Source of the DNA: Oopsacas minuta
Taxonomy: Eukaryota > Animalia > Porifera
Reading direction: 5' to 3'
Length of the DNA: 45,960 bases
Assembly (NCBI GenBank): GCA_024704765.1
Contig: JAKMXF010000083.1
Location: 1 to 45,960 of the forward strand
Within the stretch, counting starts at the first letter, position 1. Each line of letters opens with the position of its first letter. A program made the position numbers and the translations under genes. The notes under the pieces were generated by a model. It had not been told where the DNA came from, did no database searches, and saw nothing but the letters and a program-made list of their open reading frames with translations. Of the stretch, positions 17,189 to 45,960 are shown piece after piece.

Positions 17189-17194
<6 letters not shown>

Positions 17195-22140: not shown

Positions 22141-22308
22141 ACCTGTGCCGTCAGCTTAGCCTATGGATTGAATTTGTTTAAAAAGTGCCATTATTCATTG
22201 GAGGCACTATGGAAGGTTCGGTTTAATCCCAATACACTTAGTGCCTCCAATGAATAGCGGCACCTTTCCAAATAAATGTATTTAATAGACTAAACTGTCG
22301 GCACAGGT
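22141..22308. mobile_element. MITE family B, complete palindromic copy
   Basis: ACCTGTGCCGTCAGCTTAGCCTAT...ATAGACTAAACTGTCGGCACAGGT with an internal inverted pair ATTCATTGGAGGCACTA / TAGTGCCTCCAATGAAT. Confidence 0.85.
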
Positions 22309-24790: not shown

Positions 24791-25177
24791 TTTGTTCATA
24801 AAATGCAGCAATCCTATTATAGTTAAACCTTAGGTTTATAATTATATACTCAGATAATTAGAGAAATTTACCACTTTATTATCGTATCAAATGCATATCA
24901 ATACATGTATCAAATTGGTTGGGTTGTTTACATAGCAGTACGTATACTCCCCAAATTGCCATTGCTTCCTCGACCAAAGTCGATTAATAAAGGATAATGA
25001 CTCACCATCTTCACTACCGTTTTTAGCATATGTAAGAATGTGTCCCTAAGAGGGGGACCAAATAATTAAAATGTAGGGCTCTAATATTTCAATTGCAAGG
25101 GCTCCGAAAAATTCTCCAGCCGCGACTGTATGTAACCATAATATAGAGTAGTTTTAATGTCTATACGTACGTATGCC

Positions 25178-25592
25178 TGGGGCATTAGTCGATCACGATA
25201 CCGATCGTTCAATAAAAAATGATTGGAAATCATGATTCCGAACCTTGTACCAAAAAGGGTCGCGATCACCATCACGATCATTTCGATCACATTTCTAAAA
25301 TTTTGAGCACCTCATTTAGGGAGATACTCTATTACCTGCGGCAGTCAGTCCGTCCGGACGGCCATGCGAAATCTACCAGTCCGATTGCAACTGAAATTAG
25401 TACATACATTATATAAACATTTTGGGGTCTAGATTCTCAAATTTTCTAATTCTGTCTGCCTAAAAGATTGAAAATTTTCAGGGAAAAATGATCCCGATCT
25501 ACACACGATGACTGTTTATAAAATGATCAGCGATCATTCTCCGATCGTCAAAAACAGATCGCGATCAATGATCACACGATACTAATGCCCTA
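25178..25592. mobile_element. MITE with (T)AGGGCATTAG TIRs and CGATC-rich subterminal repeats (family C)
   Basis: TGGGGCATTAGTCGATC at the left, GATACTAATGCCCTA at the right, many CGATCA units. A related left end starts at 43720. Confidence 0.65.
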
Positions 25593-26357
25593 CCTGGTAT
25601 ACTCACCTACAGAATGCTATGATTCAACATTAATCAAATTTAAATGATAACAAGAGGGACCAAAAGATGCCTGCTGCTGACAAGGTGTGTTCGTAGGCAG
25701 CGCAGGGCAAAGCTTGCTTGTATTGTAAGTATGAACGGTGGAAACATAAACTTTGGTCCGACAATAATAGTTAAATCAATGGTAGATTTGAGAACATGCC
25801 CGAATCTGAGGTATCTTTCCGCCAGCTGGCAGTCCTGTATAAGAATGATAAATTGCCGAAATATAATGATAAGAAAGTATGTATTAACATATGATTGCAA
25901 TGCATAATATAAAATATAAATATAATCAGTGGTTCCCAACTGGGGCGATTATCGCTCAAGGAGGGGAGAATTTCGATAAATACTTAAAGAGGGAGAGATG
26001 CTATTTTAAACACCTTAAAATGTCCAATCCTAATTGTTATCTTGGAGAAAATAATAAAATTATGACATTCTGAATTATGTCAAATTGTAAACCAATTTAT
26101 ATATCTCGTATTCTCTATATATTTCAAGCCATATCAATTGTAACTCAAATTGTGATTTCTAGAATATATTATTTTTATGATTCATTGATACGTATTGTTG
26201 GGTTGTATTATATACACCTAGCACGCTTCGCTTGCTAGGATCCGATGTATTCTTGAGCTTTGTGCCTTGTTTTAGCATAAGTATGAAACAGGCCATCCCA
26301 CCGCCCCGCTCGTAGGGATGGAAAGAATGGGTTGATTTTTCCAATAAAATCATTATA

Positions 26358-27267
26358 CAGTCAAGGGACAAAAGTATTCGACCACACAAATATATTGTCA
26401 TAAATTGTATACTCTTTCCCGCTCCTATATATTGTGTAGTCTATATTCGTAGCTGCAATCTAGTAATTTCCATAGAATAACATGTTTTTCAAGAATTTCA
26501 AAAAAATATTTTCGATTTACACTTTCTGAAGGTGTTAATTATTAATAATTATCAGATAATTATTGATAACCAAATATGTGGTAATTCAAAACCTATTAAT
26601 AATCTATAATTTCTGACTTGATATTTGAATTCTACGTAGGCGAGTTACCCCAGATTGAAATTTCCAATCGGATTGGGCAAATTTACCAGAGTTATGGATG
26701 AATTTCAATTTTGTGCCATTTGTGCCACCTTTTGCCGAAGGTGGCACAAGTGGCCGCTATCAAGAGGTTATTTTGGAATTCAAGGGTTAGCATAGTCATA
26801 TCATTCGAAAATATTACTTCGACTTATTCCTCCTAACCCTAGTTGATTTCCTTGTAGTGGCACTTTTTCCTGCCACTTGTGCCACTTTTTCAAAAAGTGG
26901 CACAAGTGGGACAAATTGAAATTCTGTTATAACTTTGGTAAAATTGTTCAATCCGATTGGAAATTTCAACCTGGGGTAACTCGCCTACGTAGAATTCAAA
27001 TATCAAGTCAGAAATTATAGATTATTAATAGGTTTTGAATTACCACATATTTTGATTATCAATAATTATCTAATAATTATTAATAATTAACACCTTCAAA
27101 ATGTGTAAATCGAAAATATTTTTGAAATTCTTGAAAAACATATGTTATTCTATACAAATTACTAGATAGCAGCTACGAATATAGACTACACAATATATAG
27201 GAGCAGGAAAGAGTATACAATTTATGACAATATATTTGTGTGGTCGAATACTTTTGTCCCCTGACTG
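26358..27267. mobile_element. 910-bp Tc1/mariner-type foldback MITE with very long TIRs
   Basis: TA|CAGTCAAGGGACAAAAGTATTCGACCACAC ... GTGTGGTCGAATACTTTTGTCCCCTGACTG|TA; arms are complementary over roughly 370 bp. Confidence 0.93.
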
Positions 27268-27522
27268 TATAGGCCAGGTTTACTCTCGTTTCTACTAGAG
27301 TTGTTATTTTAGCAATTTCAGTATTCCTCTTAAGAGGTAACCAGCGAAGATTTTTGTTTAGTTTTGCATCTTGCCTGATTTTGTTTGTTTCTTGCAGCAG
27401 AGATTCGAATATATGATATTTTATGCCTGGATACAAGAATATTGTCAGGATCAATCTGGTCTTCGTTCTTCTAGTGTTGAGGCTACTTTTGTTTAGCCTG
27501 CTGCTCGAGTTTTATAAGAAAA

Positions 27523-28078
27523 ATGTCATCTAAACGAAGAAGTTGTATCAATGATCCAGACGTATTTTGTTACATATGCGGAAGCTATGTTCCATCTGTT
27601 CAACGGCAGAATTTAACACCTTTTGTCAAAAATGTCTATTATGCCTATTTCGGTGTGAAATTAGGGGACCAAGAAAAACCATGAGCCCCGCACAAAGTGT
27701 GTCGTACTTCTGTGTCATCATTGAGGTAGTGGAGCATTGGAAAACAAAAATCTTTAGCATTTGGTGTGCCAATGGTTTGGAGAGAGCCGAATGGACATGG
27801 AAAAGAATGTTACTTTTGCTCATGTGTTGTTTTTGGATTCAATGTCAAAAATAAGCATAAAATTCAATACCCTAATTTGCCTTGCGCAATACGACGGATT
27901 CCTCATGGGACAGATGTCCCAATTCCATTGCCTCCAAAAGTTTTACAAACAGTTGAAGAAGATTCTCTCAGCGAAGAGTCTTTGTCTGAAGAATGTTCCG
28001 AGTATGAGTGTGATGATGATCAGCAGCCAAAGTTCAATCAAGCGGAACTAAATGACTTTGTCAGAGATTTAAATTTAC
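27523..28078 (+). pseudogene. Chapaev (CMC superfamily) transposase N-terminal Cys-rich fragment
   Basis: MSSKRRSCINDPDVFCYICG...YFGVKLGDQEKP*APHKVC...FGVPMVWREP.GH.KECYFC...YPNLPCAIR.IPH..DVPIP; contains stops and ends at the N at 28079. Confidence 0.8.
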
Positions 28079-28431
28079 NATCTCAAAAACGTGACATGTT
28101 AGAAAAAATCTAAGGCCAGATTTGGATTCAGCATGGCCATATTAGTCTAGGTAAACTTGAAACGAGCAAGGAATAAAAAATAAGTTGTAAAATGTTGTCC
28201 AGTGTAATTCATTCTATCAATGGACCAGTTTCAGTGACTAATATCAACAATAAATTTCTAATAAAATTCTAGCACAATGGAAATAATATTTTGGCAAATT
28301 TCCAACCAAATTCAATGAAAATAAGTCCTAATGAGCCGTGTTTTAGGAAAATAGGCCTTTAGCCAATTTCATTTTAAATTTCTATGTTAAACAGAAACTT
28401 GGTCCCTGCCTTCTCTATTAATCGAATACTG

Positions 28432-28560
28432 CCGGGAAAATATGTGCATTTATGACGTGAAGAAGGAGCTAAAATCCCGATTTGGGTGCGGGAATTGGTT
28501 AAAATGAAGTGGTAAATTTTATTTTTCCTTTTTATCACGAACGTAACACTTCGGCAGTAA
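28432..28560 (+). repeat. Dispersed repeat, direct copy of about 30688-30817
   Basis: Shared core GGTGCGGGAATTGGTTAAAATGAAGTG.TAAA with flanking similarity. Confidence 0.7.
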
Positions 28561-29151
28561 TCGGTTAAGGAAGTAAGGAAGAGTAATATGCTACATTGGT
28601 TAAAACATTGATCAAAATGAGACTATATTTTGATCAATGTGATAATTTACCCGATGTAGGATTCTAATCCCTTCATTATTTGACGCGAACGAGCGTAGCG
28701 ATATTGGAGCGCGAATGATGCGGGAAGCGGTATCCCAAGTCCTAAGCCTATTGAAATTTGTGCTCGCAATAATTTAGACAAATTGGAAATTTTATCAAAG
28801 TTCTACATTTTGATTCAAGTATGTTTTGAACTTAAATCCTTAAGTTTGATCAAAGTTCTACTGAGGGAATTTGATCAGAATATTGCACTTCAATTTTATC
28901 AAAGTGTGCAGATTCGGCAAATTATTAATTTGTATTCCCGAGAATTTGCTGTCCCAAGACACCTCTATATGGAAAATGTCAATACATGTATATTTGGAAG
29001 TATTAAAGGAAATTCTTAAATAATTAGAAACAAGGTTTGGTTAAATAATAATAGCGATGCGTCAGACGTATAGCTTTCCCAGATCGTGATACGACTTAAT
29101 AAGAGAATTGTACTAGTATTCTCTATGGATAAATTAATGCAGAAAACATAC

Positions 29152-29777
29152 CTTTGAAAATGCTTTGAATTTGGTTTGTAATTCGCAAACTTCATCCAAG
29201 TTACTCCCATAGTTTGTCGATTCTACCTCTTCCAATTTTTGAGAAATAGAAAGAATCATCTCATCTGCATCGAACATAAACTGCAGTTTCTCGGACAAGC
29301 TCTTCAGCTCATCACTTCTTAACTGACAAGCAGTCTGTAATTCAGAATACTTAATTTCTGCTGTATGATACAATTCTTTGGCATTACCCAGAACAAAATT
29401 TTCATCATCTTTCATTCGAGAATATAATTGGAACAATTTTGATAAAACATCTTGATGTGCGGCAATTTCAACTTCAAATGCAAGTAGTTTCTGTTTTGCG
29501 ATCGATAAATTGGAAGAATCTTGGAGAGATTGTTCCTTAAGGATGTCAAACTTATCAGTAACCCATGTTACCAACTCATCAACCAATCGTTTAAATTGAA
29601 TAAATTGTTTAGTAGCTTCTAATTTGAATTTTCTAGTTTGCAAAGAATTTTTAAATTCATAAAACTTATCAACCACTTCGCGCCTTCGACGATCTATATC
29701 ATCAATTGTAGGTTGCTGCTTTGTAACATGTGAAGTTACAATATTCATCAAAGAATAAGACGAAGCAGTATATAATT
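29152..29777 (-). CDS. SPTAN1: Alpha-spectrin exon A: N-terminal tetramerisation helix, repeat 1 and start of repeat 2
   Basis: TIDDIDRRRREVVDKFYEFKNSLQTRKFKLE...FKRLVDELVTWVTDK...QKLLAFEVEIAAH and LDEVCELQTKFKAFSK match the alpha-spectrin N-terminus as I recall it. Acceptor TTCTAG at 29778, first ATG at 29748, phase-0 donor GTATGT at 29151. Confidence 0.85.
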
Positions 29778-31024
29778 CTAGAATGTAAAATAAAACAGAA
29801 ATTCACTACAAAACAGATTAATAGAAGTATAGCATTGGGCTGTGAAATGTAAGTGTATGGTAGGCAGGGTTGCCGTGGATATGGAAATCCCCATACCCAT
29901 CAACCTGGAAACCTTCAAATCGTGAGATTCGACAAAATCTCACGATTCTATGATGTGACATGCAATCTGGTATAAGTTTTTCTGTGAAAAGACCAGGAAT
30001 TCTGAAGTGTTCATAGACCCGAAATCGTGAGAGTTGAGAGCCCTGCCATTGGTATGGAATGGGTAGGGGAATGATATTTTCCTGTGGGAATCCCCATATA
30101 TGGGGATCCATAAGAAGATTCTCATGGGGATCAGGGACGTCGCCAAGGCGTGGGCAATGCCCCCCTAACAAAATCTCGGGCCCGAGGCATGTCCCCCTTG
30201 TTTAAATTGCAAACTGTAAATTTCGGCTCGCTCCCCACATAGCTCCCAAGTGACCCGCATTGGAGCATTGAAACCCGCCGTCCCGCTAGGCCAGGCAGAA
30301 AACCCCCATTTCGGGTTCCATTTCAACTAGGTAGGACGTCGGGAAGCAGTCATCAATAACTTCACCCTCTGCCACAACAATACATACTTGCCAACCATCC
30401 AGGACTTGACCTATGATACAGGGGAAAAATTGCTAAATCCAGGAAATAATATAGGATATTTCTGGCATTTTTATAAATAGGGAAAATCGTATTATTTGAA
30501 TAGAAATTAGAAATCCAGAGAAATTTTGAAAATCCTGAGATTTCGAGATAAATATCCAAGGAAACAGTTATAAGGGGTTGGTAAGTATGCAATGGATATT
30601 TGTAAAATTATTGCATTATTCCATAAAGCATTATAACCACCTTTTTCGAATTTCGTTTTCTTATCCATGTCGTGCTTAAGCGGATACTGCAGGGAAAACG
30701 TGTGATTTTATTACGTCAAAAAGTTGGTAAATCTCGTTTTTGGTGCGGGAATTGGTTAAAATGAAGTGATAAAATTTTAGTGCTCCTTTCGTTACAAACG
30801 TAACAATTCGGCCGTGATATGTCTCCAGGAATTGAATCAATTGAGAACAGGCACGTAGCTAGAGCAAGACATTCAGCGGGCAAGAAGTATTTAGGGAGGG
30901 CAATTGCAGGGATAAATATTTTTGAAAAGTTAATTACTTGTGTATAACAAGTACGACCCAGTCTCCTTTTCTTACATGTATAACCTTTTTAATTCATAAA
31001 GTACCAGATTACTAGGCTAGGGAN

Positions 31025-31178
31025 GACGTCATTACTTTCACACCCAAAGACTTAGAAAAAATCTAGTTACGTCAATCGATTCCTTGGGTACGATTCCCCA
31101 TATGTCAATAATATAGTTTAATACGTTATCTAGTACCCTAATACCTACTTCCAGTTTTAGCCATTTCGTGCCACTGTG
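31025..31178 (+). mobile_element. Right end of a Transib-type element (TIR GTGCCACTGTG)
   Basis: The 11-bp TIR at 31168-31178 is the reverse complement of CACAGTGGCAC at 41161-41171 and is followed by CATGA, the same 5-mer that precedes the other end. Confidence 0.75.
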
Positions 31179-31556
31179 CATGACAACGCAAGGCCCCCAT
31201 GTAAGCTCCAAGACAATGGCTGGAATTGACGACTTTGGATTCGAATGCCTCCCTCATCCCCCATATAGTCCAGAACTGGCTCCCAGCGACTACTGGCTGT
31301 TTGGAAAGATGAAGAGACCTCTTCGAGGGAAGAGATTTGAGGATTTCAAACGGCTGGAGTATGAAATAAAATAGTGGGAAAAAGGAACCCCTAAAGAATT
31401 CTATACCACTGGGCTGGAAAAGTTACCAGAACGATGGAAACGATCTATAAAGTTAAAGGGGGAATTTATCGGAACATTTGATAATCAATTATGATAAGTA
31501 TAGGTTTACTAAGTTAATTATGAATACAAGTCTCATTATTTATTGAACAACCCTTG
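31179..31556 (+). mobile_element. Mariner 3' half (continuation of 40252-41160)
   Basis: HDNARPH...PHPPYSPELAPSDYWLFGKMK...LPERWK; right TIR GTCTCATTATTTATTGAACAACCCTTG|TA matches the left TIR at 40252. Confidence 0.92.
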
Positions 31557-31560
31557 TATA

Positions 31561-31918
31561 TCCTATAGTATTGTTTCAATTCATCTCACTAATCCGAATT
31601 ACTTTGCAATATTAACAGTGCTTTTGGATTAGTGAGCGTATACTTGTTTGTACTTTGTAAGCCACTCTGGGCCTTATCACTAAACATTTTACGAATTTTT
31701 CATAAAAATATTCTTGAGCCAATCTATTAATAAACTCGTATAGAATTCTAACACGATTCTTAGAATTTTTCTTAGAGAAAATTCACAAAATGTTTAGTAA
31801 TAAGGCCCCTAGTGATTTACAAATTACGAACACAGGTCACGCCACAAATCCAAAAAAACACAATTAATATTGCAGAATAATTCGGATTAGTGAAATGCAT
31901 TGAAACAATACTATAGGA
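31561..31918. mobile_element. Palindromic MITE of about 360 bp
   Basis: TCCTATAGTATTGTTTCAAT ... ATTGAAACAATACTATAGGA with inverted arms continuing inward (CACTAATCCGAATTA/TAATTCGGATTAGTG, GGGCCTTAT/ATAAGGCCC). Confidence 0.85.
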
Positions 31919-32317
31919 AATAGGTAATCATATAGGAGTACGTTTTTCGAAAGTCGTGCAAATGATGAAACAACTTCCAAGGTGTGTAATATAGCATTAT
32001 GTAATTGTCCGCAGGCAGTAGAATTGGGAACAAATGGTCCTATTAAAAACTTAGAACACTTTCCAAAGTTGTGTAACCTTCAGGCCTTGTTTGGAGTAAC
32101 AAGTTTCGGATTAGAGGGTAGACAAAACCTGTATCAGGTCAGCGTATGTACTATGTGCATGTAAATATACAAAATCAGTGCAAAGCGCAGTGTACAACGA
32201 GCCAAATCCGCGTAGAATAGTAATACAAGATCATGGATTATTTTCATCCTGGGTCAGGTACGTCATTTTGCCATAGAATAATAATCAGAACATACAATTT
32301 AAAAAAAGGTTACTTAC

Positions 32318-32497
32318 CTCATGTGCTGCTTCTAAATGTTTTTCCCTTTCTATTGTTGCATGTTCAAGATTTTTCCATCGAGCCAATAGATCGTCCAACT
32401 TAGATTGAATAATCTCAGAATTAGGGTGCTTAGAAGACAAAAGGATATTTCCTAGTTTGAGAACCATATCCCACCTTGATTCCTCAGTAGACAAACT
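32318..32497 (-). CDS. SPTAN1: Alpha-spectrin exon B: remainder of repeat 2
   Basis: 180 nt, phase 0/0, TTAG acceptor and GTAAGT donor. SLSTEESRWDMVLKLGNILLSSKHPNSEIIQSKLDDLLARWKNLEHATIEREKHLEAAHE has helix B/C spectrin-repeat spacing. Confidence 0.85.
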
Positions 32498-33439
32498 CTA
32501 ATAATACAAAATGATTTTATCATGGAATGTTAGATTATCCAACAAGTACACCGAATCATATTCAAATATCCATGGATATGACCAAACTTCGATATCTCTA
32601 AATGAAGATTTCCATAGATATGCATAATTGCATATCCATGAGAAGGCGAGACAATATAAATATCAAATTGAGAGGGTAGATAATTTAGTCATATTCAAAA
32701 CTTGAAACTATAGCATATGGAAACGCGGAATTAGTCCAACAGAAACTCGGATTATGTACTACACATAGAGTTATGAATTTGTCCTACACTATATTGAAGA
32801 TAGGAATCTGTCCTACAAGGCTAAAACCAATCTCGGTATTTGTCCAACACTGTTTTGTATTTGTCACTAGTATTGTATTTTAGATTCACACCCAATAGGT
32901 GAGGATAAGAAATTAATAGTGCTTGTTTGATATTCATTGCTTGTAAGGTATTTGAAAATGAGACCAACAAGTGCTTATACATTCTGGATCTGAGGGTTCT
33001 ACTATTAGACAATTGTATATCAAGGTATTTATCGCAAAACTATCCATATTTCCTCAAATTTGATTTTCTACTGACTAGTAACTTTCTTCTTTCAACTGAT
33101 CTTATGGAATATACCGTCACTGAAGGTAAAAAGAAAAAATGATCGAATTATCTCTAAAATCCTTCCGTTATGTCAAGGTTATGGAATCTGACTCGTGTAT
33201 TAATGTCAAGTGTAGCTTATTTCGAACTCACTCTTGTGAAAGTTATGGGAAATTCACAAAATAGCAAATTTACTCGAAATCTCTACTTGTCACAATCATG
33301 AAGCTGTAGCTCAAAATCATGACGCAATTATACTAAATAATAAAATTAAGTGAAAGCTGAAACCTTTATCATGAACCTTCGAGAGATATTTAGTGATACT
33401 TGCCGAGAATCTGAGGGGTCATCTTCTGTTACCTTCAAA

Positions 33440-34080
33440 AAGTAGGAAAAAGGGATGTGAAAAGAGAAGAAGACTCCTGCAACCTAAATTGCCTTCGAAA
33501 GTATTAGAATTTGATCAATTATCACAATAGTTTCGACATTGTTCGAACCATTTGCAAACTGTCATCGATAGAGATCAGATTGCCGTTATTTTGGTTCAAG
33601 TTGTAGAAGCAGTGTGCTAAATAGTTCAACGACTATTCACTTTGATGGAACTTTTAAAGTTGTTCCTGGACTTTTCTATCAACTGTCCATGTCGATATCC
33701 ATGTTCTTCCCGCTCTACCTGTCTTCATGTCAAGTAAAACTGAAGCTCTATATTATGCTGTATTCTTATCAACTCGCCAATTATTTATAATTATAAACCT
33801 TCTTTCGCGATTGGTGATTTTGAAATAGCTCCATAGAATGCGCAAGTACAAACATATACATATATCACAGCAATCGGTTGCTGGTTCCATGTACAAAGCA
33901 GTCTTTGAAAAGGATAAGAAAACCGGCCTTGCAAAATTATATCGACATAGTCAAGCTTTCAAATTATGGATCCGAAAGCTAATGGAATTACCACTACTAC
34001 AGGAAGAAAAGACATATCATAAGAGAAACCACGTGGTGTAGTCGATTCAGACAAAAAATGAATCAGAAGATTTAAAAGTA
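33440..34080 (+). pseudogene. MULE/Mutator transposase fragment
   Basis: IHFDGTFKVVPGLFYQL, KTEALY, IGDFEIA and GCWFH motifs; stops and frameshifts. Confidence 0.8.
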
Positions 34081-34337
34081 TTGTAATAAAACATGGATTA
34101 ATGGTAAGTTGAAACCGATCGAACCGAATATCAGTATTCATGAATAGTGACCTACTGATAATATTCGGTTTGGGCCAACCGAATATTGAAGAATTCTCCA
34201 AATATTATTCGGATGAACCGAATATTGAACAATTTGGTTGCGACCTTGATTAATGGCACAATGGGTTATTCGGTTCCAGCAGGGGAAATTTTAATACTTA
34301 AATCTTGCCAATTTATATATTGAGAATGACTAGAAAT

Positions 34338-34769
34338 CTATAATATTAAATCTCAATTGCTGTTAATCTGTTTGTTTGTTTGTTTGTTGTCAAGGAAAGG
34401 ATTTATGGTATGGAATTTGAAATTATCGCGTAGCTATGTATTTATCGTGTTTATCAAGGATGCAAATAGAACTCAATAAAACTTCACTAAAATATATCGA
34501 ACATGCTGAACACATTATCACACTTTTGGATTAATCATATGTAAATTTATTGTTGTTTTTATGAATATATAGTAAACAAATTTCAAAATTGAGGTAATCA
34601 TACTTTCAACCACTATACTGGTATACTCGAGTATGCTGAGTCTAAATAATGTAAACAACATCAATATTATTAAATCCCAATTGTTGTTTGTCTGTGTATT
34701 TGTCCATTGAATACTTCGAGGCACAATGCGCCGAGTTCATCGCGAAGCGACGAGCCAAAGGCTTGTATA
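34338..34769 (-). repeat. Repeat family A, copy 3 (internally shorter)
   Basis: Both termini match copies 1 and 2 but the central duplicated modules are missing. Confidence 0.85.
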
Positions 34770-35429
34770 TAGGTGTATCCAAATTCAAAATTGCACTTTA
34801 TCTGAATCAACTTACATGAGTGTTGTTCTATCTCAAAGTCTCACCAAAATATGTTAATTTCGGGCCTTTAGACTCATATTTTGTCCACCCAACTTAAATT
34901 CCTATAAAGATAATTTCAACCTTAACAATACTATCAAATTTATACTGGGTGTAGTTCTAATGGTACTTTTACAGCTCAAACCCAATTTAGGTGAATTATC
35001 ATTAATTTTCTCGACATAAACTTTGTGATGATACAGCATAATTATGGGTCAAATAAAATTAATCAAGCGAACCTATTTTGTTGTGAACAAAATTTTCTCG
35101 TGATTCTCGCACTATTCAGGATATTACACGCATGACACACTATCTAATAAAACTATTCTATAAACATTTGTTTAGCGAAGTTCAACGGAACCAAAATAAC
35201 ACCAACATTCCATTTTATTCTTTTGGTTGCCATGGCATGTCAAGCTCAATGCTACTATGTTGATGTAATGTTTAACTCAACTATTATTCACAACTCCACT
35301 TTCATTCTCGAAGCCAGTTGTCACGAGTTCGTCAATTTGTGGACTCAAGAAATTCATTAGAGTAGTGACACTTGTAAAGTTTTCTTTTTGAGATAACAAT
35401 GCGATTAGCTGGTTGGAGAATCTACAATN

Positions 35430-35590
35430 AATTCAATGTGTCGTTATCTGACAGGTCGTTATACCCGAGGTATGGTGTGTGCAGAATAATGCTGCGAGAT
35501 TCTGGGCTAGCAAAATGAGTCGTTATAAGCGATTTGTCGTTAAAGCAGATGTCGTTAAAGCAGATGTCGTTAAATCCAATGTTTACTGTA
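35430..35590. repeat. One end of a pogo/Tigger-type MITE with short GATGTCGTTAAAGCA tandem units
   Basis: ...GTCGTTAAATCCAATGTTTACTG|TA terminus; begins at the N at 35429. Confidence 0.55.
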
Positions 35591-36099
35591 CAAGGATATG
35601 GGAAATCTGGTAAATACTATAAATTGGCTATGCTTATTGGGCAATAATTTTAACGATTATCGAATTCCAATTGGATATTCATGAAATGTGTCATCCACGG
35701 TATCTCCAGTAACTCTTGCAAAACGAGGTAACTTTATAATGACCAAATTTTGATATTTTGTAAATAGAATCTATAGATCATTTCACAACTTCTCTTTGAA
35801 ATGAAAGATGAAATATTTACCATTCTACAAGGCATAAAGGAATGGCATATATTGAACAAATAAATGCTTAACAAACACATATTTCCACATATTCGTAAAT
35901 TTCTAGCATATGCATAATGGTTGATAATATATTATTCTACAAATAAACAATACAAATATTCGCGCAAAAATGCACCGTTTCTGGGATATTCAATCGACAC
36001 GTAAATACCTTTATCTCGGACCGCATCCCTGCTCCAAAATTCACAACAGGTTAGCAGTCCTTATATTGGAGTAGGCTATGCTCAAGTCCATTAAATTTG

Positions 36100-37025
36100 G
36101 TAGGCAATATATAAATTCTCGACAATATCGAATTGGTATATTTTGGCTGGAATAAATCTGTTAATATTTATAGATAATAATCAATACAAGTCATGTAATC
36201 CGACTATCCCCAGTTAGAGATGAAGTCATCTGTTCCGGCAATATGTTGTTAAAAATCTCACAATTTCTAAAGCTCTGATAAACGATCACTAGTGCGTCTT
36301 TGAGTTCAAGATAAATACTAAGTGATCTGAGGATGTTAGACAGGAAATTTAAATTTTTGTAATTATAAAATGATCATGGATAGCCATCTTTTGGCCAATA
36401 TCCACTTATAACTCGATTGTCGTGAGAATTGTAGTCAAATCAGTCTAGCCAATATGTAATGCATACCCAACTTCCCATACCCTTGTAATATATTTTGATA
36501 CGATTTCTCTAACCGGTGTAATGCAATCATGAATATGCCCATATTTGGTCATTATCAAGATTTATACAAAAGTGCTTAGAGATATCGTATCAAAATATAT
36601 TACAAGGGGATGGAAAGTAAGCTATGTAGTACATATTGGCTGGAGTAATTTGAATAAAACTCTAGCGACAATCGAGTTATAAGTGGATAATGGCCAAAAA
36701 AGGGCCATCCATAGTATCTAGTATAACTCAATAACGTGACAACTGTATACTTACAAAAATTCAAATTTCATGTATAAACAGCCTCAGATCACTTGAAATT
36801 AATCCTAAATCAAAGACACACTAGTGATCATTTATCAAAGCTTTTGAAATGGGAGATTATTAACAACTTGTTGCCCTGTTAACCAAATAGATGACGTCAT
36901 TTCGATGGGGAATACGTAGTTGGATTACATGACTTGCATTGATTACTATCTATCAATAATACATTTATTCGAGCAAAAAAGTACTAATTCGATATTATCG
37001 AGAATATTGTTTTCATATGGCAACA
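36100..37025. repeat. Diverged foldback of about 0.9 kb
   Basis: Inverted pairs TATCCACTTATAACTCGATTGTCG / CGACAATCGAGTTATAAGTGGATA, CCCTTGTAATATATTTTGATACGAT / ATCGTATCAAAATATATTACAAGGG and CAAGTCATGTAATCC / GGATTACATGACTTG, centred near 36540. Confidence 0.8.
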
Positions 37026-39220
37026 AAGGCACAGACTGTTGGCCCCAAAGAAATCTCATGTCATTTGTTGGGATATTTACATAATTTTTAAGTCATATAT
37101 ACTTTTATAGCCTATTTGACCAAACATAAAAATCAATTCATCCTGATTGATCTGGGTGTGGTCAAATTACAAATACGAATAATTAGAAACTGTAGCCATA
37201 GCTCTTGTGAGTTTAAGAACACTGATCAAGAAACAAAATTCAATGCTCCTACATGTTGTGCCAATATCTATTTCCGAGTTTGGATTTGTTGAGCTAGTTT
37301 TCAGATGGGTTAGCTGAATTTTGGGAACAATTGTTGTTGACGATAATTAGTTAGCTGACTTTTGATTTCTGTCAAGAGATTTCTATCGAATCAACCTCAA
37401 ACCTAAAACATCCTTTAGAAATACTAGAAAGAAAGGGTAAGTTAACTCACAAATCCTGAAATCTGGTAATCAGAAAATTCATATTCTCTTCAGTATTTGA
37501 TATCATACTCAGCAATGGCGAATCCAAGGGTGGGCAAGGGTGGGCAAATGCCCACCCTGGCAAAATTGATTCCTACCCTTGCAATAACGACTAAGTCCTG
37601 TCACAAAAATTGTCCTCAATTTGGTATCTTAATTCAAATACTATGATATTATTAGATAACAACTATATTACAGTTGATGCTGCATAAATGTTAGTAAAAT
37701 TGATCCGACAGTAAAGTCATAGCATGTAAAACTTGCCAAATGTTACAAGATGGGATTGCTTTTACCATCGGATCAACCGAATCAACCGAATCATTTGAGT
37801 CGTGGAGGGCTGATAATCCTGACTACGTAAATGATAATATATACTTATAATCATCTATCAATTCTTTGGTTTCGTTTCTATTGTGAATCCACATAGATAT
37901 AAGATATAATATAATGCACAAATAATGATATAAATTATTGTATTACTGTTATTAAACATTAAGCAGGACAATAGTTTTGAATAGAAAAGAGTAAACAATT
38001 TGAAAACACATTATCGCTTGACTATTATGAAATTTAGATACAACAAGTACATCAAAATATCCTGAAATACTCATTGATGGCAGCATCCAGATAAGCCCGG
38101 GGACACCTATGCATCATCCACACAGGTAACCCAATAGAAGAAATGCTAGTCACCCCACTGAAAAAGTTAATACTTGGTTGCAGTCTAAATGTTGATTATA
38201 CGTACAACGAAACTGAAAATTTGCGTGTTTAATATTCGTAGAATAAATGGAAAGGTTAGAGGGACTGTTAGGGGATATAGCTATAGGCATATATAGGGAG
38301 CAACCGAAATACCAGGTTCCTTGAAACTATCATCACTCTAGAAACTTTTCAATACATACTATAACTCACAAAGTATTGTATTACATTACTCAGCTATATA
38401 TACTCAGAATAATATGTATACTAATTAATTTTTACTGTGCAAATTATATAAGCATAGTGACACAGTTCTAAAATGGTTGACTTTCTAAGTCGGTAGGTAT
38501 TTATATGTTCTCTCTTCTGTTCAAACCTTGGAGATTAAGACTCCAAATATGGCAAGTATACTCGAGTGACATCTAGTTGTGCACCTGACATTTTAAAATT
38601 TCTGATGTATTCCCACACCTTGTAAGTGATTAATCATATTTCCATAAATTTCTATGTAAAATTCAAATAAATGCTAGAGATTAGATTTCAACATGTTATC
38701 ATGGGGTTAACAGACATATAGGCGTAATCATACTAATCAAGTACGCTGAATCCGAATTTCGCATTTCAATTTTATCATATGTAAATGTATTGTCGTTCTG
38801 TAAATATAAAGTAAACAAATAATTGAATTTCAATATATAAGTGGATACTTGCTCTTCACGGCTATACAGAGGTATTTGAGTACGCTGAATCTTTTTGCAT
38901 TTTCAAGATTCATATGTTTAAATACTAAGTTGTTTAATAAGTCTTTCAATGAAGACGTAGTACATAGATTATGTATTTATAAAACGTATTATATGTTCAA
39001 TCTACAATTTTTGGTGACGCAACTTCTATTAGGCTGATTTCTGCGATTGATATGAGATTTTAAGTATAAATCCGTCATCAAAGACTCTTGGATCGGTACT
39101 TCCATGGGTCGGGATTCCTCTGATCCTGCTTCTTTCTGAAAGAAACATACTCATTACATGCATGAAGTGGGACTAGTAATTGGAAGCACTATGTGTATTG
39201 GGGTAAAACTTAACTTGTAT

Positions 39221-39284
39221 AGTGCCTCCAATTACTAGTGCACTTATCACAAATTTCATTTATAGGCTAAGCCGTCGGCACAGA
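39221..39284. repeat. MITE family B, right half only
   Basis: TAGTGCCTCCAAT...ATAGGCTAAGCCGTCGGCACAG matches 22230-22308. Confidence 0.65.
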
Positions 39285-40251
39285 TTGAAATCTTAGATTT
39301 TTGCTCGCTACGCTCGCAGTTTATTGTAAAATTATAAACACACATTAGTAATTTGCTGAATTTTGAGATTAGTCACTGTTGTAAATTAGATATGTCATCA
39401 TCGCTAACACTATGCTGACGTCATTATTATTATTGCTAATACATCCCTTTAACATGTATTACACTTCATCAATTACGAATATTCTCTCATAAAAACGTAG
39501 TTAGGAGTTCAAGTATCCTGTGACGTCCTGTTGACTTAGCACGAATATATCATATTTTGTAATGTATGCAAACTCTCCTGTTACATCAAAATTTGAATAC
39601 TAATGTGTCAGTCCTAACAACTATTGCACTTAATCAATTGGTATTATTCTAGCTGACATCGTTAGTGAGGTATTCACATTTCAAGTTTGGTGGTTCACGA
39701 TGTCACCTAAATTGCTCCGATTTGTGTCGATAATTACTGTTTACAGATGAAATAAAAGAATATATGGTTTTCAATATATTATCCAATAATCTTGGTTTAC
39801 AAATTCCAATTCGCATATAAATATTTCTAAATACCTACCACAGTTAAATTATTCAAAGAAAATAGAGACAACAAAATCAGAACAATTAAATTCCGATTAA
39901 AAGAAATTACATATAAGTTCAAGTTTTTGAATTTTCTATAAGTTAATACAATTTCAATGGGAAATGAAATGGGCAAAGGGAAATATGAATTGTGTCAAAA
40001 TCAATAATCGCATACAGAGGTGCAAATTTTGAGTTTATAATGAACCATTTGACAAATTTTCAAGTTCGCTTTTTAAGTTTCGTATTCCCTATACAGCCCA
40101 TATATCATAAACGATGTCGGCTGTAGAAGGAATACGGACCTAAAAAACAACTTTCCATGAGTTTAATACTGTGTCAGTGAGCCTTATACTAAAATTTAGT
40201 AGGTACAGTAAAAAATGACTTTCGAAAAACGTACTCGTATATGACTACGTA

Positions 40252-41160
40252 CAAGGGTTGTTCAATAAGTAATGAGACTAATGTATCGAATTCATATTCT
40301 AGATAATACAGCACTAAGCTATTCAATATACTCTTTACTCTACTAGCATATTCTTCAGTATAAAGTTTCATTTGTATCCACTAGTTTTTTCAACTAATGG
40401 ATTTTAGCAAAGAAGGAAAACGACAAATAATTTGGAACCTGTGAAAAAAGGGGAAGACTGGATCATACATTCTTCGTGAAATGCAGAATATTTTCAGTGA
40501 TGAATGTCCTTCGAAAGCCACCATATATATGGATCGAACGTTTTGATAATGGCGATGAGGAACTCCACGATGACCCTCGCGCAGGTCGTCCGACTTCCTC
40601 AAAATCCCGCAATAATATCGAGAGGATCCAAACAATTTTGGACGAGGACAGACGAATAACCTTGCGAGAGTTAGAAGAGAGGGTAGGCATCTCAAAAGCC
40701 ACACTACACTCGATTATCACTGAAGATCTGGAAATGTCGAAGGCAACTGAGCGTTGGGTCCCAAAACTTCTTCCAAAAGAACAAAAACGCGAAAGGGTCA
40801 GAGTTAGCAAAGAATTACTTTCAAGATACAAGGCAGAAGAAGACTTTTTGGATTGTATAATAACGGCCTAACGGGGGATGAAACTTGGTTTCATTATTAT
40901 GAATCAGAGAGCAAAACTCAAACGAAGCAGTGGAAGAAACGTGATGCACCTGTACCCATCAAGGTAAAGGACGCAAAATTAGCCGGGAAGAGAATGGAAA
41001 CAGTATTTTGGGATAGGGAAGGAATTATACACCTCGACTCGTTGCCTCAGAAGACAACCATAAACAGTGATTACTACGTTGACGAATTGAAAGAATTGCG
41101 TCAAGCGATTAAACGTGAGGGGCGAGGCAAGTTGACACGTAACGTATTGCTACAACATGA
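40252..41160 (+). mobile_element. Mariner 5' half with frameshifted transposase
   Basis: TA|CAAGGGTTGTTCAATAAGTAATGAGAC left TIR; W..RF..G.EEL.DDPRAGRP, ERWVPKLL, TGDETWFHYY, NVLLQHD, interrupted at CATGA. Confidence 0.92.
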
Positions 41161-41456
41161 CACAGTGGCACACCCCCTGGAAATTGGTCAAAATTTCAAC
41201 CTGATATTTAGTTACCATTTAAAGTTTATTGGAAAGAGAAATATCCAATTACTTGAAATATCTAAAATTGTTATGATCCATCATTTAGTTTAGGAACAGC
41301 TGGAATGTGTATATGCATTACAATTTCTTGCTCAGAAATTATTCTTGAAAACCACAGACATTCATTTATATCAATGAACTTAAATTCCAGTATCTAAGCA
41401 ACTAATACATTCCAAAGACTTCATTCCATTGCATTTTCGACTACTCTCTTATTATA
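41161..41456 (+). mobile_element. Left end of the Transib-type element (TIR CACAGTGGCAC)
   Basis: Starts immediately after CATGA (41156-41160) inside the mariner HDN codons and runs to the N at 41457. Confidence 0.75.
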
Positions 41457-42993
41457 NAATTTTTACGTCCATTTTCGTCATCGATGCCAAAAAGAGTCAA
41501 ATTAGTACGGAAAAGTAACGGAAATAAGATAAATTATTAGGCCTACTATATTATTGATTGTTTAAGGATTCTAATAACATATTTAGAATAGAAATACACT
41601 AAATGTACTTGTAGCTAGGGCAAAACAAAGATCTTCCCAATTTCAAGTTGACAGACTGTAAACAATAAAATTAAATGTATTCAAGAACTCGAAAAAATAC
41701 AATTTTCAAGACTTACAAGGCGGTAAGACAGCATGTTCAAGATCCATCAAGCAAATCTAGTATTCATCCATATCCAAAATCTCCATTCAAATAATACAAT
41801 AGTGGGCCTATTCTTGACGTCAATACAGTAAAAGATTATAATTCAAAGGCTACTACAAGTCTGAAATACGCGAAATTTATCATGACAAAATTTTGATATT
41901 TCGTATGAAAACATCTTGAAATCCCATGGTAAAAATTTCGTAATAAAATATGTAATAATATACTCTTGATGGCGCTTCCAAATGGGGCATTTTGGTAACG
42001 ATTTGTCTAGTGAGGAATCTGGTGACGTATTTCGTCCTGAAAGTGTTTTAGATTTTGATTGTATGTATATTTAAATATCACTAATAAATTTGTCGTGCAG
42101 AAATGTGCCATTTTGATACTATAGGAAATAATTGGATTCCCTATGTAAATTAATTGCTATATACAGCTGTCCTTGGTCCAATTTTTCAATGGATTATCAT
42201 TGCCTTAGTGTATAGAATACTATGATTTTATAATAAAAATATATGAGAAAATATAAAACTCATAGAAATGCTAGGGTCATCACATAAATGGAGCCAAAAC
42301 GAGATTTAAAACACAGGTAGACACGTTGAGTGGATAAATAATTTATGTATCTTGAAAAACAAGAAGTAAATAGAATAAAAACATGATATAATTTTATATT
42401 AGTCAATACATAGATAAAGAGGAGAGGAATTAAGCAACTAAATTTTAGCTAAAAAGTAAATTCACCCGGATAATTATAAACATGGTATGCAAGAAGACAA
42501 GTAGAGTCGAAATCTGGTATTTTTGCCCCTAAAATGCACGGAAAATGATAGAAAAATAACCCGTTTTAGATACTAAACCATTTTACGCTTCGAGGTGAAA
42601 TTTTTGGTATTAAGGTTTATCGAATTAGTCTATATACCATAGAGACAACAAAATCAATAAGTTGAGTAATACCCAAACAATTAACATGATTTAATCATTT
42701 TGAAAAATGAAAACTCACTCTAAATCTGGAATTTTTCATCAAAGGCATGAAAAAGGGAAAGAAATAAAGATGCAAATAATCCGAAAGAAAATAAATTAAA
42801 CTTAACTTGTTAAATGATTAAGGTATCAAAAAACTAGATTATTAAAACTCGTTGGAAAAAATTTTTGTATATAATAGTATTTGGGGGAAACCAGCAATCG
42901 CAAGGAGGAGAAAAACAAAGAGAGGCAAAATTCAGGGGGCAAAAAATTAGATTTCGACTGTAAGTGTATATATATATATATATATATACTAAC

Positions 42994-43536
42994 CAAGAGA
43001 GTCTCTGAATGGTGTGAGGTAATAAGTGAATTTCCAAATGCAATTGTATCCAAAAAAGATGCATTTCGTGCAGTAAATTCTCCTTCGTATTCTAAAATTC
43101 GTTCTAGCAGTGAAGTAGCATCAGGTAAAGTGGAAGGTTCGGAATCGCCTTCGATGAGTTGTTGCATATCAGCTATCCAAGATAGTATATCAGAAGAATC
43201 ACGTAAGAATCTTTGAAACTTTTGTGATTCAGATAATGCTAGGCCTCTTTGATCTGAATTCTGACGGAGACATTCCCAACAACTTATTAGATCTGCTTGA
43301 GTCTCTAAAATAATATCTGAATATTTGTAATGATTTTCTAATAGAATGGCTGAGTCAGATTCGAGTTGTTTTACGCTCTCTTCTATTATGACCAGATCAC
43401 GAACCATAACCAAATGATGCCTCAACAGAGCTTCTGAAGTAGCTGGATCCTTCCCAACATCCTCAATCGACAAAACAATCACTTTATCAGCTATCCAAGA
43501 TTGGATCTCTTGTGTTTTATCGATATATAGATATAC
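42994..43536 (-). CDS. SPTAN1: Alpha-spectrin exon C: repeat 3 and most of repeat 4
   Basis: 543 nt, phase 0/0, CTTTAG acceptor and GTTAGT donor. VYLYIDKTQEIQSWIADK...EDVGKDPATSEALLRHH...LISCWECLR...FQRFLRDSSDILSWIADMQQLI...ATSLLER. Confidence 0.85.
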
Positions 43537-43719: not shown

Positions 43720-44474
43720 TAGGGCATTAGACGATCCTCAATTAAAGGATCTAAATCCCGATTCCGGCTGAAATTATGATCGGCGTTCCCGATTCCGATC
43801 CAATTTAAGATCCAATTGATGATATAATTGATGATCCATTATCGAAATATAGTTGAACAATTTGAATGCTGTAGCAGGATATTTCGACTAAAAATTCGGA
43901 TATCATTATCTCCGTATTCATATATACATGGGCGGTACATCATTACAAAAAATACTACCATGTATATTTAAGTAATTCTATGTAGGTGTTTGAGCCACTC
44001 TTCTATACATAAACATAGTTAGTATACAATAACAACTTTGCTTCTATATACCGCCGAAACCGGTATTTCCTAACAGTTATTTGGAGGCAAATGTAGTTGG
44101 AAAAACAATGGAAATAGATGTAAATCCCACATGATTTAAAATCTGAGAAATACATAAAGTTAAAACAACTGATAAGCACTATTACTTGTAGATGTATTAG
44201 TGATAGTCGGAGAAGTGAAATTGTCCTGCGACAAAATACTATTGCCTCCAAAGCTGAGTTAGACAAGTGGGCAAGGAATGATCAAATTTGCTAAATCCTA
44301 ATAGTTTTGTATTAGTATTGGCCAATAAGAAATGTTTGTTGTGAAATATGATCATATTATCAAGTGCTGTACTTGAAATACTGAGGAGATTATTTTATGA
44401 GAATTAATTGCAAAACGACCCAAAAACTTTACTCGAATTTTTTGAAAATAATCGCTTCCGATCCCGATCCCGAT
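43720..44474. repeat. Family C (CGATC-rich) element, left part, apparently interrupted by the hAT at 44475
   Basis: TAGGGCATTAGACGATC start and CCCGATC/TCCGAT units at both ends of the segment. Confidence 0.5.
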
Positions 44475-45960
44475 CAGGGTTGTTTGATTTAAATCACTTC
44501 AAAAATCAACATGATGATTTTTTATTTATTTAAATTTTGACACTTCGCTAATAGTGTCATGTTTTCAGAGAACAATAGAATGGTGCTTTTGTTTTCAATA
44601 GATTGAAGCCATTACTAAATCATAGTAACGGCTACAATCTATTGAAGTCATTACTATGATGTATTGCATATAAATATGGAATCCCTTGCATGTGAATGCA
44701 TAATCATTATGACTGGACGAAAGAGTGACTGCGTTTGGAAGTATTTTGATACGAAAAAAGAAGTTGGGAAAGCAGGGTGTCGTGCAACATGCCTGAAGTG
44801 TGGGAAGGAGGTGCAAGGACTAGTTGCTAGGTTAAAGCAACAGCATAATGTGTGTGCTGAATTTATCGACTCCACTGATGATGAATTGTGTATTTTGAAT
44901 CCGGAAATCCAAGCTCTTTCCCAGAGGAAACGTAGTGTGACAGATATAAGATTAGTATCACAAGCAAAGAAACAGAAATCCGTCATGTCAAGTATGACTA
45001 ACTTTGTTGTGCAAACATCAACAACTGCAAAAGCTGCCATTGATCTCCAAATAGCACGGTTTGTTTGTGCAACTAACTCACCTTTCACTATTGTTGAACA
45101 TCCTGAATTTTTAAAGTTAATAGCAATGTTTCGTCCTGGATACCATCCTCCTAATCGACACAATGTTGGCAATTAACTACTCGATGAGCTTTATGTTGCT
45201 ATGCAATGACAGTGCAAGGAACAACATGGCGGAAAATGTATCCATGATGTTAGACGGATGGAGTAATATCCATAATAAGCCAGTTGTCTGCGTGTCAGTG
45301 ACAACATCCGATGGGGATCGTTATCTTACCGAAACGGTAGATACATCAGGCCATGCACACACTGCTGAATATCCACAAGAAGTGACCACGTCCGCTATTA
45401 TATAGACTGAACAGAGATACAGTTGTAAAGTAGGTACCTTTGCCACAGACAACGCATCAAACAGGGTCAAAATGTGGCGACAACTGACATTTGATAGTGT
45501 TACTACTGATACAAACATCATATCCTATGGTTGTTCTGCTCACTATCTTAATCTATTGGCCATAGATATTGAAATACCGGGCGTGAAAGAACACATTGTT
45601 CAGATCGTGAAATAATTTAGGAACACCCATCTCCCAGCTGCATGGTATAAATTTGCTGCCGGAAAGAAACTAGTACTACCACAAGAAGTTCGCTGGGACA
45701 CTATCGCGGATTCTCTGCAATGCTATTTGGAAAACTGGACAATAATCCTCAAAGTGTGCGAGGAACACCGCGACACTATTAACGGTACGATCGCCATGAA
45801 AGTGCAAAATATTAACATCAAGAGAAATGCTGAGGACTATCTAAAACAGATGAAGCCAATCGCTGTCGCTCTTGATAAAGTGCAGAGTGACAGTTGCAAA
45901 CTGAGTGATGCTGTTGAAGTTTGGAAAGCACTGAAGAGAGATATGGATTCATTAATGCCC
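44475..45960 (+). mobile_element. hAT transposon with BED-finger transposase pseudogene, running off the window
   Basis: Terminus CAGGGTTG at 44475; ATG 44709 MTGRKSDCVWKYF...CLKCGK, SPFTIVEHPEF, MLDGWSNI, TDNASN, GCSAHYLNLL, EVRW. In-frame stops at about 45174 and 45520-45615. Confidence 0.9.

What the first reader, a model, noticed from the sequence alone, without database searches (positions are those of the whole stretch)
29152..43536. Alpha-spectrin exons are all on the minus strand but lie in the reverse of their splicing order
Seen: the three exons are all phase 0. Joined A(29152-29777) to B(32318-32497) to C(42994-43536) they give seamless repeat register: ...TKFKAFSK|SLSTEESRW...LEAAHE|VYLYIDKTQEIQSWIADK.... 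Established: this is the canonical alpha-spectrin order (repeat 0-1-2-3-4). Minus-strand transcription of the window as written would meet them as C, B, A. Inference: either the scaffold lists contigs in reversed order (favoured, because single Ns at 31024, 35429 and 41457 separate the exons, and see the split-mariner finding) or the gene is truly scrambled and needs trans-splicing. Either way, automated gene models here will be wrong.
Basis: partly seen in the sequence, partly recalled or inferred. Interest (0 to 1): 0.75.

Follow-up and report, generated by a model that had tools for sequence, protein, structure and literature searches.

The report
Alpha-spectrin exons shuffled by scaffolding error
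The three exons are the true start of an ordinary alpha-spectrin gene, and their back-to-front order comes from the genome assembly joining small contigs in reversed order, so it is an artefact that breaks gene models and not a scrambled gene.

Summary
Three minus-strand, phase-0 exons with canonical AG/GT sites sit at A 29152-29748, B 32318-32497 and C 42994-43536. They encode alpha-spectrin residues about 1-445, but the minus strand meets them as C, B, A. Single Ns at 31024, 35429 and 41457 separate their blocks.

The cause is an assembly artefact.
- A related sponge's N-free contig carries the orthologous exons as A, B, C on one strand.
- The rest of the gene lies on two other scaffolds of this assembly, C154 and C5. 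There too the exon-bearing blocks are in exactly reversed order with strand kept. Exons that share a block are in the right order.
- A mariner copy is split by one Transib insertion with an 11-bp inverted repeat and a 5-bp target duplication. The insertion's left end is the last 296 bp of block b6 and its right end is the first 154 bp of block b5. So b6 truly precedes b5, with about 2.8 kb unassembled.
- The assembly statistics match Oopsacas minuta, which was built with SPAdes, then SSPACE and GapFiller, using paired-end and Nextera mate-pair reads.

True scrambling is very unlikely. Other first-stage notes report reversed exons elsewhere in this genome; I did not test them.

The parts
29152..29748 (-). 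Alpha-spectrin exon A (199 aa): start codon, N-terminal partial repeat, repeat 1 and the first half of repeat 2. Lies in block b4.
   Evidence: Translation and splice donor. Pfam Spectrin 1.1e-12. Matches PDB 8iah_8 residues 17-203 and the N-terminal tetramerisation fragments 3f31, 3lbx and 1owa. 61% identical to the relative's exon at L009 10025-10588.
32318..32497 (-). Alpha-spectrin exon B (60 aa): second half of repeat 2. Lies in block b5.
   Evidence: Spectrin profile positions 50-104. Orthologous to L009 12384-12560, which lies between A and C in the relative.
42994..43536 (-). Alpha-spectrin exon C (181 aa): repeat 3 and most of repeat 4. Lies in block b7.
   Evidence: Matches PDB 8iah_8 residues 274-442. 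56% identical to L009 15235-15762. It is the only strong copy in the genome.
31024..31024 (.). Single-N scaffold join between b4 and b5. The sequence is not contiguous here.
   Evidence: b5 starts with the last 154 bp of a 3.28-kb Transib element, and b4's end has no similarity to that element's interior.
35429..35429 (.). Single-N scaffold join between b5 and b6.
   Evidence: b5 ends in an old repeat family, and b6 starts with the last 138 bp of a high-copy element.
41457..41457 (.). Single-N scaffold join between b6 and b7. The sequence is not contiguous here.
   Evidence: b6 ends with the first 296 bp of the Transib element, and b7's start has no similarity to the element's interior.
40319..41160 (+). 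Left part of a mariner copy (HTH and Transposase_1 domains), ending at the target-site duplication CATGA (41156-41160).
   Evidence: Pfam PF01359 7e-20. At least 40 family copies align up to 41162. Sequence shown.
41161..41456 (+). Left end of the Transib insertion (inverted repeat CACAGTGGCAC at 41161-41171), cut off by the end of b6.
31025..31178 (+). Right end of the same Transib insertion (inverted repeat GTGCCACTGTG at 31168-31178), starting at the first base of b5.
31179..31559 (+). Right part of the same mariner copy, starting with the duplicated CATGA (31179-31183).
   Evidence: In full-length copies such as C188, C10, C343 and C304, this part directly follows the part that ends at 41162. 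Sequence shown.
44473..45960 (+). Left 1.49 kb of a hAT-like element about 2.1 kb long, cut off by the scaffold end in the intron upstream of exon C.
   Evidence: Three other copies run about 640 bp further, and that stretch is absent from the window.

Best explanation
This is a scaffolding artefact. The animal has one ordinary alpha-spectrin gene with exons in the usual order. The locus is full of young, high-copy transposons, so the assembler broke it into many small contigs of 1.7-12.7 kb. The scaffolder then chained these contigs with their orientation kept but their order reversed. That is the same thing as correct order with each contig flipped. It left a single N, or an N run, at each join. 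The gene is therefore spread over three scaffolds: C83 (which is this window), C154 and C5. Each scaffold has its exon-bearing blocks back to front.

Shown: the reversal, its coincidence with the N joins, and the non-contiguity at those joins.

Inferred: the cause. Read pairs of opposite orientation (Nextera mate pairs versus paired ends) were fed together to SSPACE. A pair read with the wrong orientation links X->Y as Y->X without flipping either contig.
For: 1. In a relative's contig (ENA ERZ25072740 ctg126361, 685 kb, no N in the 47 kb examined) the orthologous exons lie on one strand in the order A 10.0 kb, B 12.4 kb, C 15.2 kb, and onward to the EF-hand exon at 39.4-41.1 kb. A second contig of that sample holds the part of the gene that was read (from exon D onward) in the same order.

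2. Orthologues of the later exons sit on two other scaffolds.
- On C154, minus strand: c2 at 4434-4063, D at 18442-17348, SH3a at 26172-25927, SH3b at 22642-22247. Ns lie at 10940, 12622-14924 and 20380-21517.
- On C5, plus strand: x at 40425-40667, E at 24905-25231, F at 28759-29313, H at 14427-14993, I at 10325-11989. Ns lie at 12737, 20741, 23051, 35087, 39708 and 41984.
- In both scaffolds the block order is exactly reversed. Exons sharing a block (E then F; SH3a then SH3b) are in the right order.

3. One Transib insertion with an 11-bp inverted repeat and the 5-bp duplication CATGA splits a mariner copy. Its left end ends b6 and its right end starts b5. The family is 3.28 kb long, so about 2.8 kb is missing, and b6 must precede b5 on the plus strand, the opposite of the scaffold as drawn.

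4. Every block end examined lies inside a high-copy repeat.

5. The assembly has 61,460,524 bp in 365 scaffolds. This matches Oopsacas minuta, which was built with SPAdes, SSPACE, pilon and GapFiller from paired-end, Nextera mate-pair and PacBio data (PMC10280926). Pairs of opposite orientation are known to confuse contig ordering (bioRxiv 10.1101/025650).
Against: - No read-level data were available, so no join was tested directly.
- The adjacencies b7->b6 and b5->b4 rest on exon order and analogy only. The repeats at those ends gave no bridging copy.
- Complete reversal of all of C5 cannot be literally true, because C83 and C154 would then have to lie inside it. The true layout of blocks without exons is unknown.
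- Exon G of the relative was not found in this assembly.
- The exact software step that produced the single Ns is my inference. It could be an SSPACE negative-gap placeholder or a GapFiller residue.
Confidence: 0.93

Rival explanations
1. The order is real. The alpha-spectrin gene is scrambled in the genome, and the cell recovers the A-B-C message by trans-splicing or by DNA rearrangement.
For: The exons are intact, phase 0 and have good splice sites. The gene is single-copy, so a working message must be made somehow. No reads were available to exclude this directly.
Against: Every change of order coincides with an N join, in three scaffolds and across at least 7 joins, and never occurs within a block. 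A Transib element and the mariner it split are permuted in the same way, and selection on splicing would not do that. The joins cut repeats mid-element, so the drawn sequence is not contiguous. The relative has the normal order.
Confidence: 0.02
2. A, B and C are separate leftovers such as paralogue fragments, pseudogene pieces or exon duplicates. They are not consecutive exons of one gene, so their order means nothing.
For: Spectrin repeats resemble each other. Exon C scores almost as well at about 1200-1370 of some alpha-spectrins as at about 270-445, and exon B is not placeable by sequence alone.
Against: Each exon is the reciprocal counterpart of one of three consecutive exons in the relative, at 46-61% identity and with the same boundaries. 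The 1167-1376 position is filled by other exons, x and E on C5. There are no stops or frameshifts. Only one strong genomic match exists for C. Together the 12 pieces tile a whole alpha-spectrin from the start codon to the EF-hands.
Confidence: 0.02
3. The single Ns are only ambiguous base calls in contiguous sequence, and a real local rearrangement such as nested inversions produced the order.
For: Open reading frames run through the Ns at 3619 and 28079.
Against: At 41457 and 31024 a 3.28-kb element is cut to 296 bp and 154 bp exactly at the N, with unrelated sequence on the other side. At 3619 the two sides carry different transposase remnants on opposite strands, so that read-through is chance. 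C154 shows the same reversal across N runs of 2303 and 1138 bases.
Confidence: 0.03

Closest known systems
Alpha-spectrin (vertebrate SPTAN1/SPTA1; full-length animal homologues P0002, P0005, P0017 of about 2,410-2,430 aa)
   Same: It has the N-terminal partial repeat, a run of 106-residue spectrin repeats, an SH3 domain in the middle, and C-terminal EF-hands plus a Ca-insensitive EF-hand. The exons tile residues about 24-2424 of P0002 in order.
   Different: It is only about 23-39% identical to bilaterian proteins. One repeat-bearing exon (G, about residues 1555-1695) is not in the assembly. The introns are larger than in the relative because of transposon insertions.
Mis-scaffolding by read pairs of the wrong orientation (paired-end contamination or mis-declared orientation of mate-pair libraries in stand-alone scaffolders such as SSPACE; Sahlin et al., bioRxiv 10.1101/025650)
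   Same: Small contigs are wrongly ordered while each is internally correct. The breakpoints lie at scaffold gaps. The data types and the scaffolder match the published method.
   Different: The reversal here is strikingly regular: every exon-bearing block in three scaffolds. This suggests a whole library read in the wrong orientation and not sporadic contamination. That cannot be checked without the reads.
Truly scrambled or trans-spliced genes (ciliate micronuclear scrambled genes; Drosophila mod(mdg4) trans-splicing) - recalled from my own knowledge
   Same: Exon order in the DNA as written differs from exon order in the message.
   Different: In those systems the permuted segments lie on contiguous, read-verified DNA. 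Here every permutation boundary is an assembly join, and neighbouring transposons are permuted too.

Membership tests
Alpha-spectrin | N-terminal partial repeat (lone helix used for tetramerisation), followed by complete repeats | tested here: met
   Exon A residues 11-118 match the N-terminal tetramerisation fragments 3f31_A (1.3e-13), 3lbx_A and 1owa_A. They also match residues 17-203 of full-length 8iah_8, and residues 24-209 or 20-204 of P0002 and P0005.
Alpha-spectrin | Tandem spectrin repeats (Pfam PF00435) in continuous register | tested here: met
   PF00435 hits in A, B, C and the last exon. The register carries across A|B and B|C.
Alpha-spectrin | SH3 domain inserted in a central repeat | tested here: inconclusive
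   The two C154 exons align to P0002 residues 935-1004 and 1004-1108, the SH3 region, at 18 and 37 bits. They show an SH3-like motif. Pfam found no SH3 in either half-exon alone. I did not search the joined exons, because joining spliced exons was barred.
Alpha-spectrin | C-terminal calmodulin-like EF-hand domain | tested here: met
   C5 10352-11986 hits EF-hand_7, EF-hand_6, EF-hand_1 and EFhand_Ca_insen at 9.1e-13. It scores 379 bits against P0002 residues 1881-2404.
Scrambled or trans-spliced gene | Permuted exons lie on contiguous, verified DNA | tested here: not met
   All order changes fall at N joins. The joins at 31024 and 41457 cut a transposon mid-element, with unrelated sequence beyond.
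Scrambled or trans-spliced gene | Read or transcript evidence for the genomic arrangement and for trans-splicing | not testable with these tools
   No reads or transcripts of this species could be reached. An exact-product look-up found nothing.
Scaffold misjoin (contig order reversed) | Breakpoints coincide with gaps, order is right inside contigs, and contig ends lie in repeats | tested here: met
   E before F, SH3a before SH3b within blocks; repeat ends.
Scaffold misjoin (contig order reversed) | An independent non-genic marker demands the alternative order | tested here: met
   The mariner halves, the Transib inverted repeats and the 5-bp duplication require b6 -> b5.

The most novel reading that the evidence does not exclude
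The reversed order is real in the sponge's genome. A conserved cytoskeletal gene would then be stored as same-strand segments in reverse order across a transposon-rich region, and expressed by trans-splicing or by programmed DNA rearrangement.
Probability: 0.02. Interest if true: 0.85.

Novelty: not a real feature. Interest (0 to 1): 0.15.

Why it matters
As biology this is ordinary: a glass sponge has a normal alpha-spectrin gene with an N-terminal partial repeat, an SH3 region and EF-hands.

The practical point is about the assembly. In a published reference genome, at least three scaffolds hold chains of small contigs in reversed order. One 2,000+ residue gene is cut into at least 10 blocks that no gene predictor can join. 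If the same artefact is widespread, as other first-stage notes on this genome suggest, two things follow. Gene models, intron statistics and some calls of missing or fragmentary genes for this species need checking against transcripts or long reads. Apparent "scrambled gene" or "permuted gene" findings in this genome should be treated as artefacts until the joins are verified.

Tried and rejected
- Exact suffix-prefix overlaps between block ends in any order or orientation: none of 8 bp or more, so the contigs cannot simply be re-merged.
- Placing exon B by sequence on pig or other alpha-spectrins: not decisive, with scores of 5-17 bits at several repeats. Orthology settled it instead.
- Reading the mariner as split at the block ends: wrong. 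Both fragments keep an HD(N)A..PH-like stretch only by appearance. Family copies show that the true split is a Transib insertion.
- Bridging b7 -> b6 with other copies of the hAT-like element: those copies end about 640 bp beyond the scaffold end and do not contain b6's first 138 bp.
- Bridging b5 -> b4 with the 1.2-kb element whose last 128 bp open b4: no block end carries its left part.
- Synteny of neighbouring genes with the relative: only the spectrin exons are conserved.
- Exon G of the relative: not found on C5, C154 or C83.
- Exact-product look-up for independent assemblies of this species: nothing on record.
- ORFs reading through the Ns at 3619 and 28079: judged chance or repeat-family continuity, not proof of contiguity.
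Every search was made exon by exon by reference.
- The large word-indexed protein search was not used, because it would not separate the rival explanations.
Full report
**What is in the window.** The window is the whole of scaffold C83 (45,960 bp) of an assembly of 61,460,524 bp in 365 scaffolds. Six single Ns at 3619, 15353, 28079, 31024, 35429 and 41457 cut it into blocks b1-b7. The coding part runs from the ATG at 29748 to 29152, 199 aa, ending TKFKAFSK. B and C are preceded by AG, all three exons are followed by GT, and all three are multiples of three. Each exon hits Pfam Spectrin, and the repeat register runs on across A|B and B|C.

**What the exons encode.**
- Exon A matches the N-terminal tetramerisation fragments of alpha-spectrin (3f31, 3lbx, 1owa) and residues 17-203 of full-length pig alpha-spectrin 8iah_8.
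- Exon C matches residues 274-442 of the same chain.
- Exon B is too short to place by itself.
- Exon C also scores well at about 1200-1370 of some alpha-spectrins, because of the protein's internal duplication.
- An exhaustive profile search with exon A returned full-length alpha-spectrins and a 207-aa product, P0001. P0001 is 61% identical and ends at the same exon boundary.

**The relative gives the reference order.** P0001 lies on a 685-kb contig of ENA sample ERZ25072740. On that contig the orthologues of A, B and C sit at 10025-10588, 12384-12560 and 15235-15762, all on one strand and in that order. I walked down the contig and merged the four loci. The overlaps agreed perfectly and there is no N in 47,179 bp. 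This gave the whole gene: exons A, B, C, c2, D, SH3a, SH3b, x, E, F, G, H and I. The last exon carries EF-hands and a Ca-insensitive EF-hand. A second contig of the same sample holds the part that was read, from exon D onward, in the same order.

**The rest of the gene in this assembly.** tblastx of the relative's gene against this genome finds the later exons on two other scaffolds.
- C154 (27,045 bp; Ns at 10940, 12622-14924 and 20380-21517), minus strand: c2 at 4434-4063, D at 18442-17348, SH3a at 26172-25927, SH3b at 22642-22247.
- C5 (Ns at 12737, 20741, 23051, 35087, 39708, 41984 and 46006), plus strand: x at 40425-40667, E at 24905-25231, F at 28759-29313, H at 14427-14993, I at 10325-11989.
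- Against a 2,426-aa alpha-spectrin (P0002) the pieces tile 24-209, [B], 279-449, about 455-563, 591-928, 935-1004, 1004-1108, 1167-1243, 1275-1376, 1388-1552, [G missing], 1698-1880 and 1881-2404.
- This tiling also removes the ambiguity about exon C, because the 1167-1376 position is filled by exons x and E.
- The last exon has the EF-hand domains.

This is one complete, ordinary alpha-spectrin gene.

**The pattern of disorder.** In all three scaffolds the exon-bearing blocks keep the gene's strand but stand in exactly the reverse of the gene's order:
- b7, b5, b4 on C83;
- 21518-27045, 14925-20379, 1-10939 on C154;
- 1-12736, 12738-20740, 23052-35086, 39709-41983 on C5.

Exons that share a block are in the right order (E before F; SH3a before SH3b). 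The order changes only at N joins. "Order reversed with orientation kept" is the same as "order kept with each block flipped", so the two cannot be told apart and need not be.

**An independent, non-genic marker.** A mariner family about 1.2 kb long has at least 40 copies.
- The copy here aligns up to 41162 in b6 and resumes at 31179 in b5. In intact copies the two parts abut.
- Between them lies a Transib insertion. It has the inverted repeat CACAGTGGCAC at 41161-41171 and GTGCCACTGTG at 31168-31178, flanked by the duplication CATGA at 41156-41160 and 31179-31183.
- Full-length family members are 3.28 kb, for example C88:38462-41740, and carry a 685-aa RAG1-like ORF.
- The window holds only the first 296 bp, which are the last bases of b6, and the last 154 bp, which are the first bases of b5.
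- The blocks drawn next to them (the start of b7 and the end of b4) have no similarity to the element's interior.

So b6 is followed in the real genome by about 2.8 kb of unassembled Transib and then by b5, which is the opposite of the drawn order. The single Ns at 41457 and 31024 are therefore not one-base gaps.

**Other block ends.** These also lie in repeats.
- b4 opens with the last 128 bp of a 1.2-kb element present in at least 32 copies at 95-99% identity.
- b6 opens with the last 138 bp of another high-copy element.
- b7 ends 1.49 kb into a hAT-like element of about 2.1 kb.
- b5's end and b1's start lie at the same point of an older repeat family.

None of these repeats gave a bridging copy, so b7 -> b6 and b5 -> b4 rest on exon order and on analogy.

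**Likely cause (inferred).** That genome was built from Illumina paired-end reads, Nextera mate-pair reads and PacBio reads with SPAdes. It was then run through SSPACE (-n 15), pilon and GapFiller, with all selected Illumina reads going to SSPACE (PMC10280926).

A pair whose orientation is read the wrong way round links contig X to Y as Y->X without flipping either. This can only happen for contigs about as short as the insert. Pairs of opposite orientation are known to confuse contig ordering in stand-alone scaffolders (bioRxiv 10.1101/025650). From my own knowledge, not checked here, SSPACE writes a single n when the estimated gap is not positive and no overlap is found, and GapFiller leaves one N in a gap it cannot close. 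Either would explain the single Ns.

**Rivals.**
- A truly scrambled gene is not excluded by reads, but it would have to be scrambled only at assembly joins, in three scaffolds, and together with a nested transposon. I give it 0.02.
- Unrelated paralogue fragments are excluded by one-to-one orthology with consecutive exons of the relative, by intact frames and by single-copy status.
- Single Ns as mere ambiguous bases are refuted and by the same reversal across long N runs in C154.

All searches were made exon by exon by reference. The SH3 call therefore rests on alignments of the two half-exons and stays formally inconclusive. I did not use the large word-indexed protein search.

**Other notes from this scan.** Other first-stage notes report the same pattern on other DNA of this genome: PCCA, ALG2, a hAT in two reversed halves, and MAP3K19. 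I did not test them. They are leads suggesting that the artefact is widespread.

**Verdict.** This is not a real biological feature. Its value is as a warning about this assembly.

Noticed in passing
window 41161-41456 and 31025-31178; full copy at G000:C88:38462-41740 (L023/L029): A young Transib family. It is 3.28 kb long with CACAGTG... termini and a 5-bp target duplication. It carries an open 685-aa ORF that hits Pfam RAG1 (4.5e-8). At least 40 copies at 88-99% identity occur in this glass-sponge genome, so it looks recently active.
   Followed up: partly
G000:C154 (whole, 27,045 bp) and G000:C5:1-46005: The rest of the alpha-spectrin gene lies on these two scaffolds, again with block order reversed. 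The exon corresponding to the relative's exon G (about residues 1555-1695) was not found anywhere in the assembly.
   Followed up: yes
G000:C365:447-456 kb, minus strand: Stop-free frames of 2231, 905 and 205 aa full of spectrin repeats, apparently with almost no introns. This is possibly beta-spectrin and contrasts with the alpha-spectrin gene, which has at least 13 exons.
   Followed up: no
window 28080-28207; copies L039-L041: b4 opens with the last 128 bp of a 1.2-kb inverted-repeat element (termini ACACTGGGCAAC... / ...GTTGTCCAGTGT). At least 32 copies at 95-99% identity. The rest of this copy is not in the window.
   Followed up: partly
window 1-109 versus 35289-35397: The first 109 bp of the scaffold are 98% identical to the reverse complement of a stretch 31 bp from the end of b5. 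Both are ends of copies of one older repeat family. In other copies, sequence like the end of b2 (15027-15352) follows about 780 bp further on, which fits a true b2 -> b1 adjacency.
   Followed up: partly
window 3339-3740 (N at 3619) and 27730-28110 (N at 28079): Open frames read through two single Ns. At 3619 the two sides carry different transposase remnants on opposite strands: a Tc1-like PIENLW motif on the plus strand in b2, and a DDE_3 match on the minus strand in b1. That read-through is therefore chance. The one at 28079 is unresolved.
   Followed up: partly
other scaffolds of this genome (earlier notes s1-293550, s1-209505, s1-277133, s1-252725): Other first-stage notes describe reversed or permuted exon order (PCCA, ALG2, MAP3K19) and a hAT in two reversed halves. 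A follow-up read the MAP3K19 case as a real rearrangement. In the light of the systematic block reversal shown here, those cases should be re-checked against the positions of Ns.
   Followed up: no
window 44473-45960: A hAT-like element with a BED-finger-like N-terminus and a weak DUF659 hit, cut off by the scaffold end. Three other copies at 93-97% identity extend about 640 bp further, giving an element of about 2.1 kb.
   Followed up: partly
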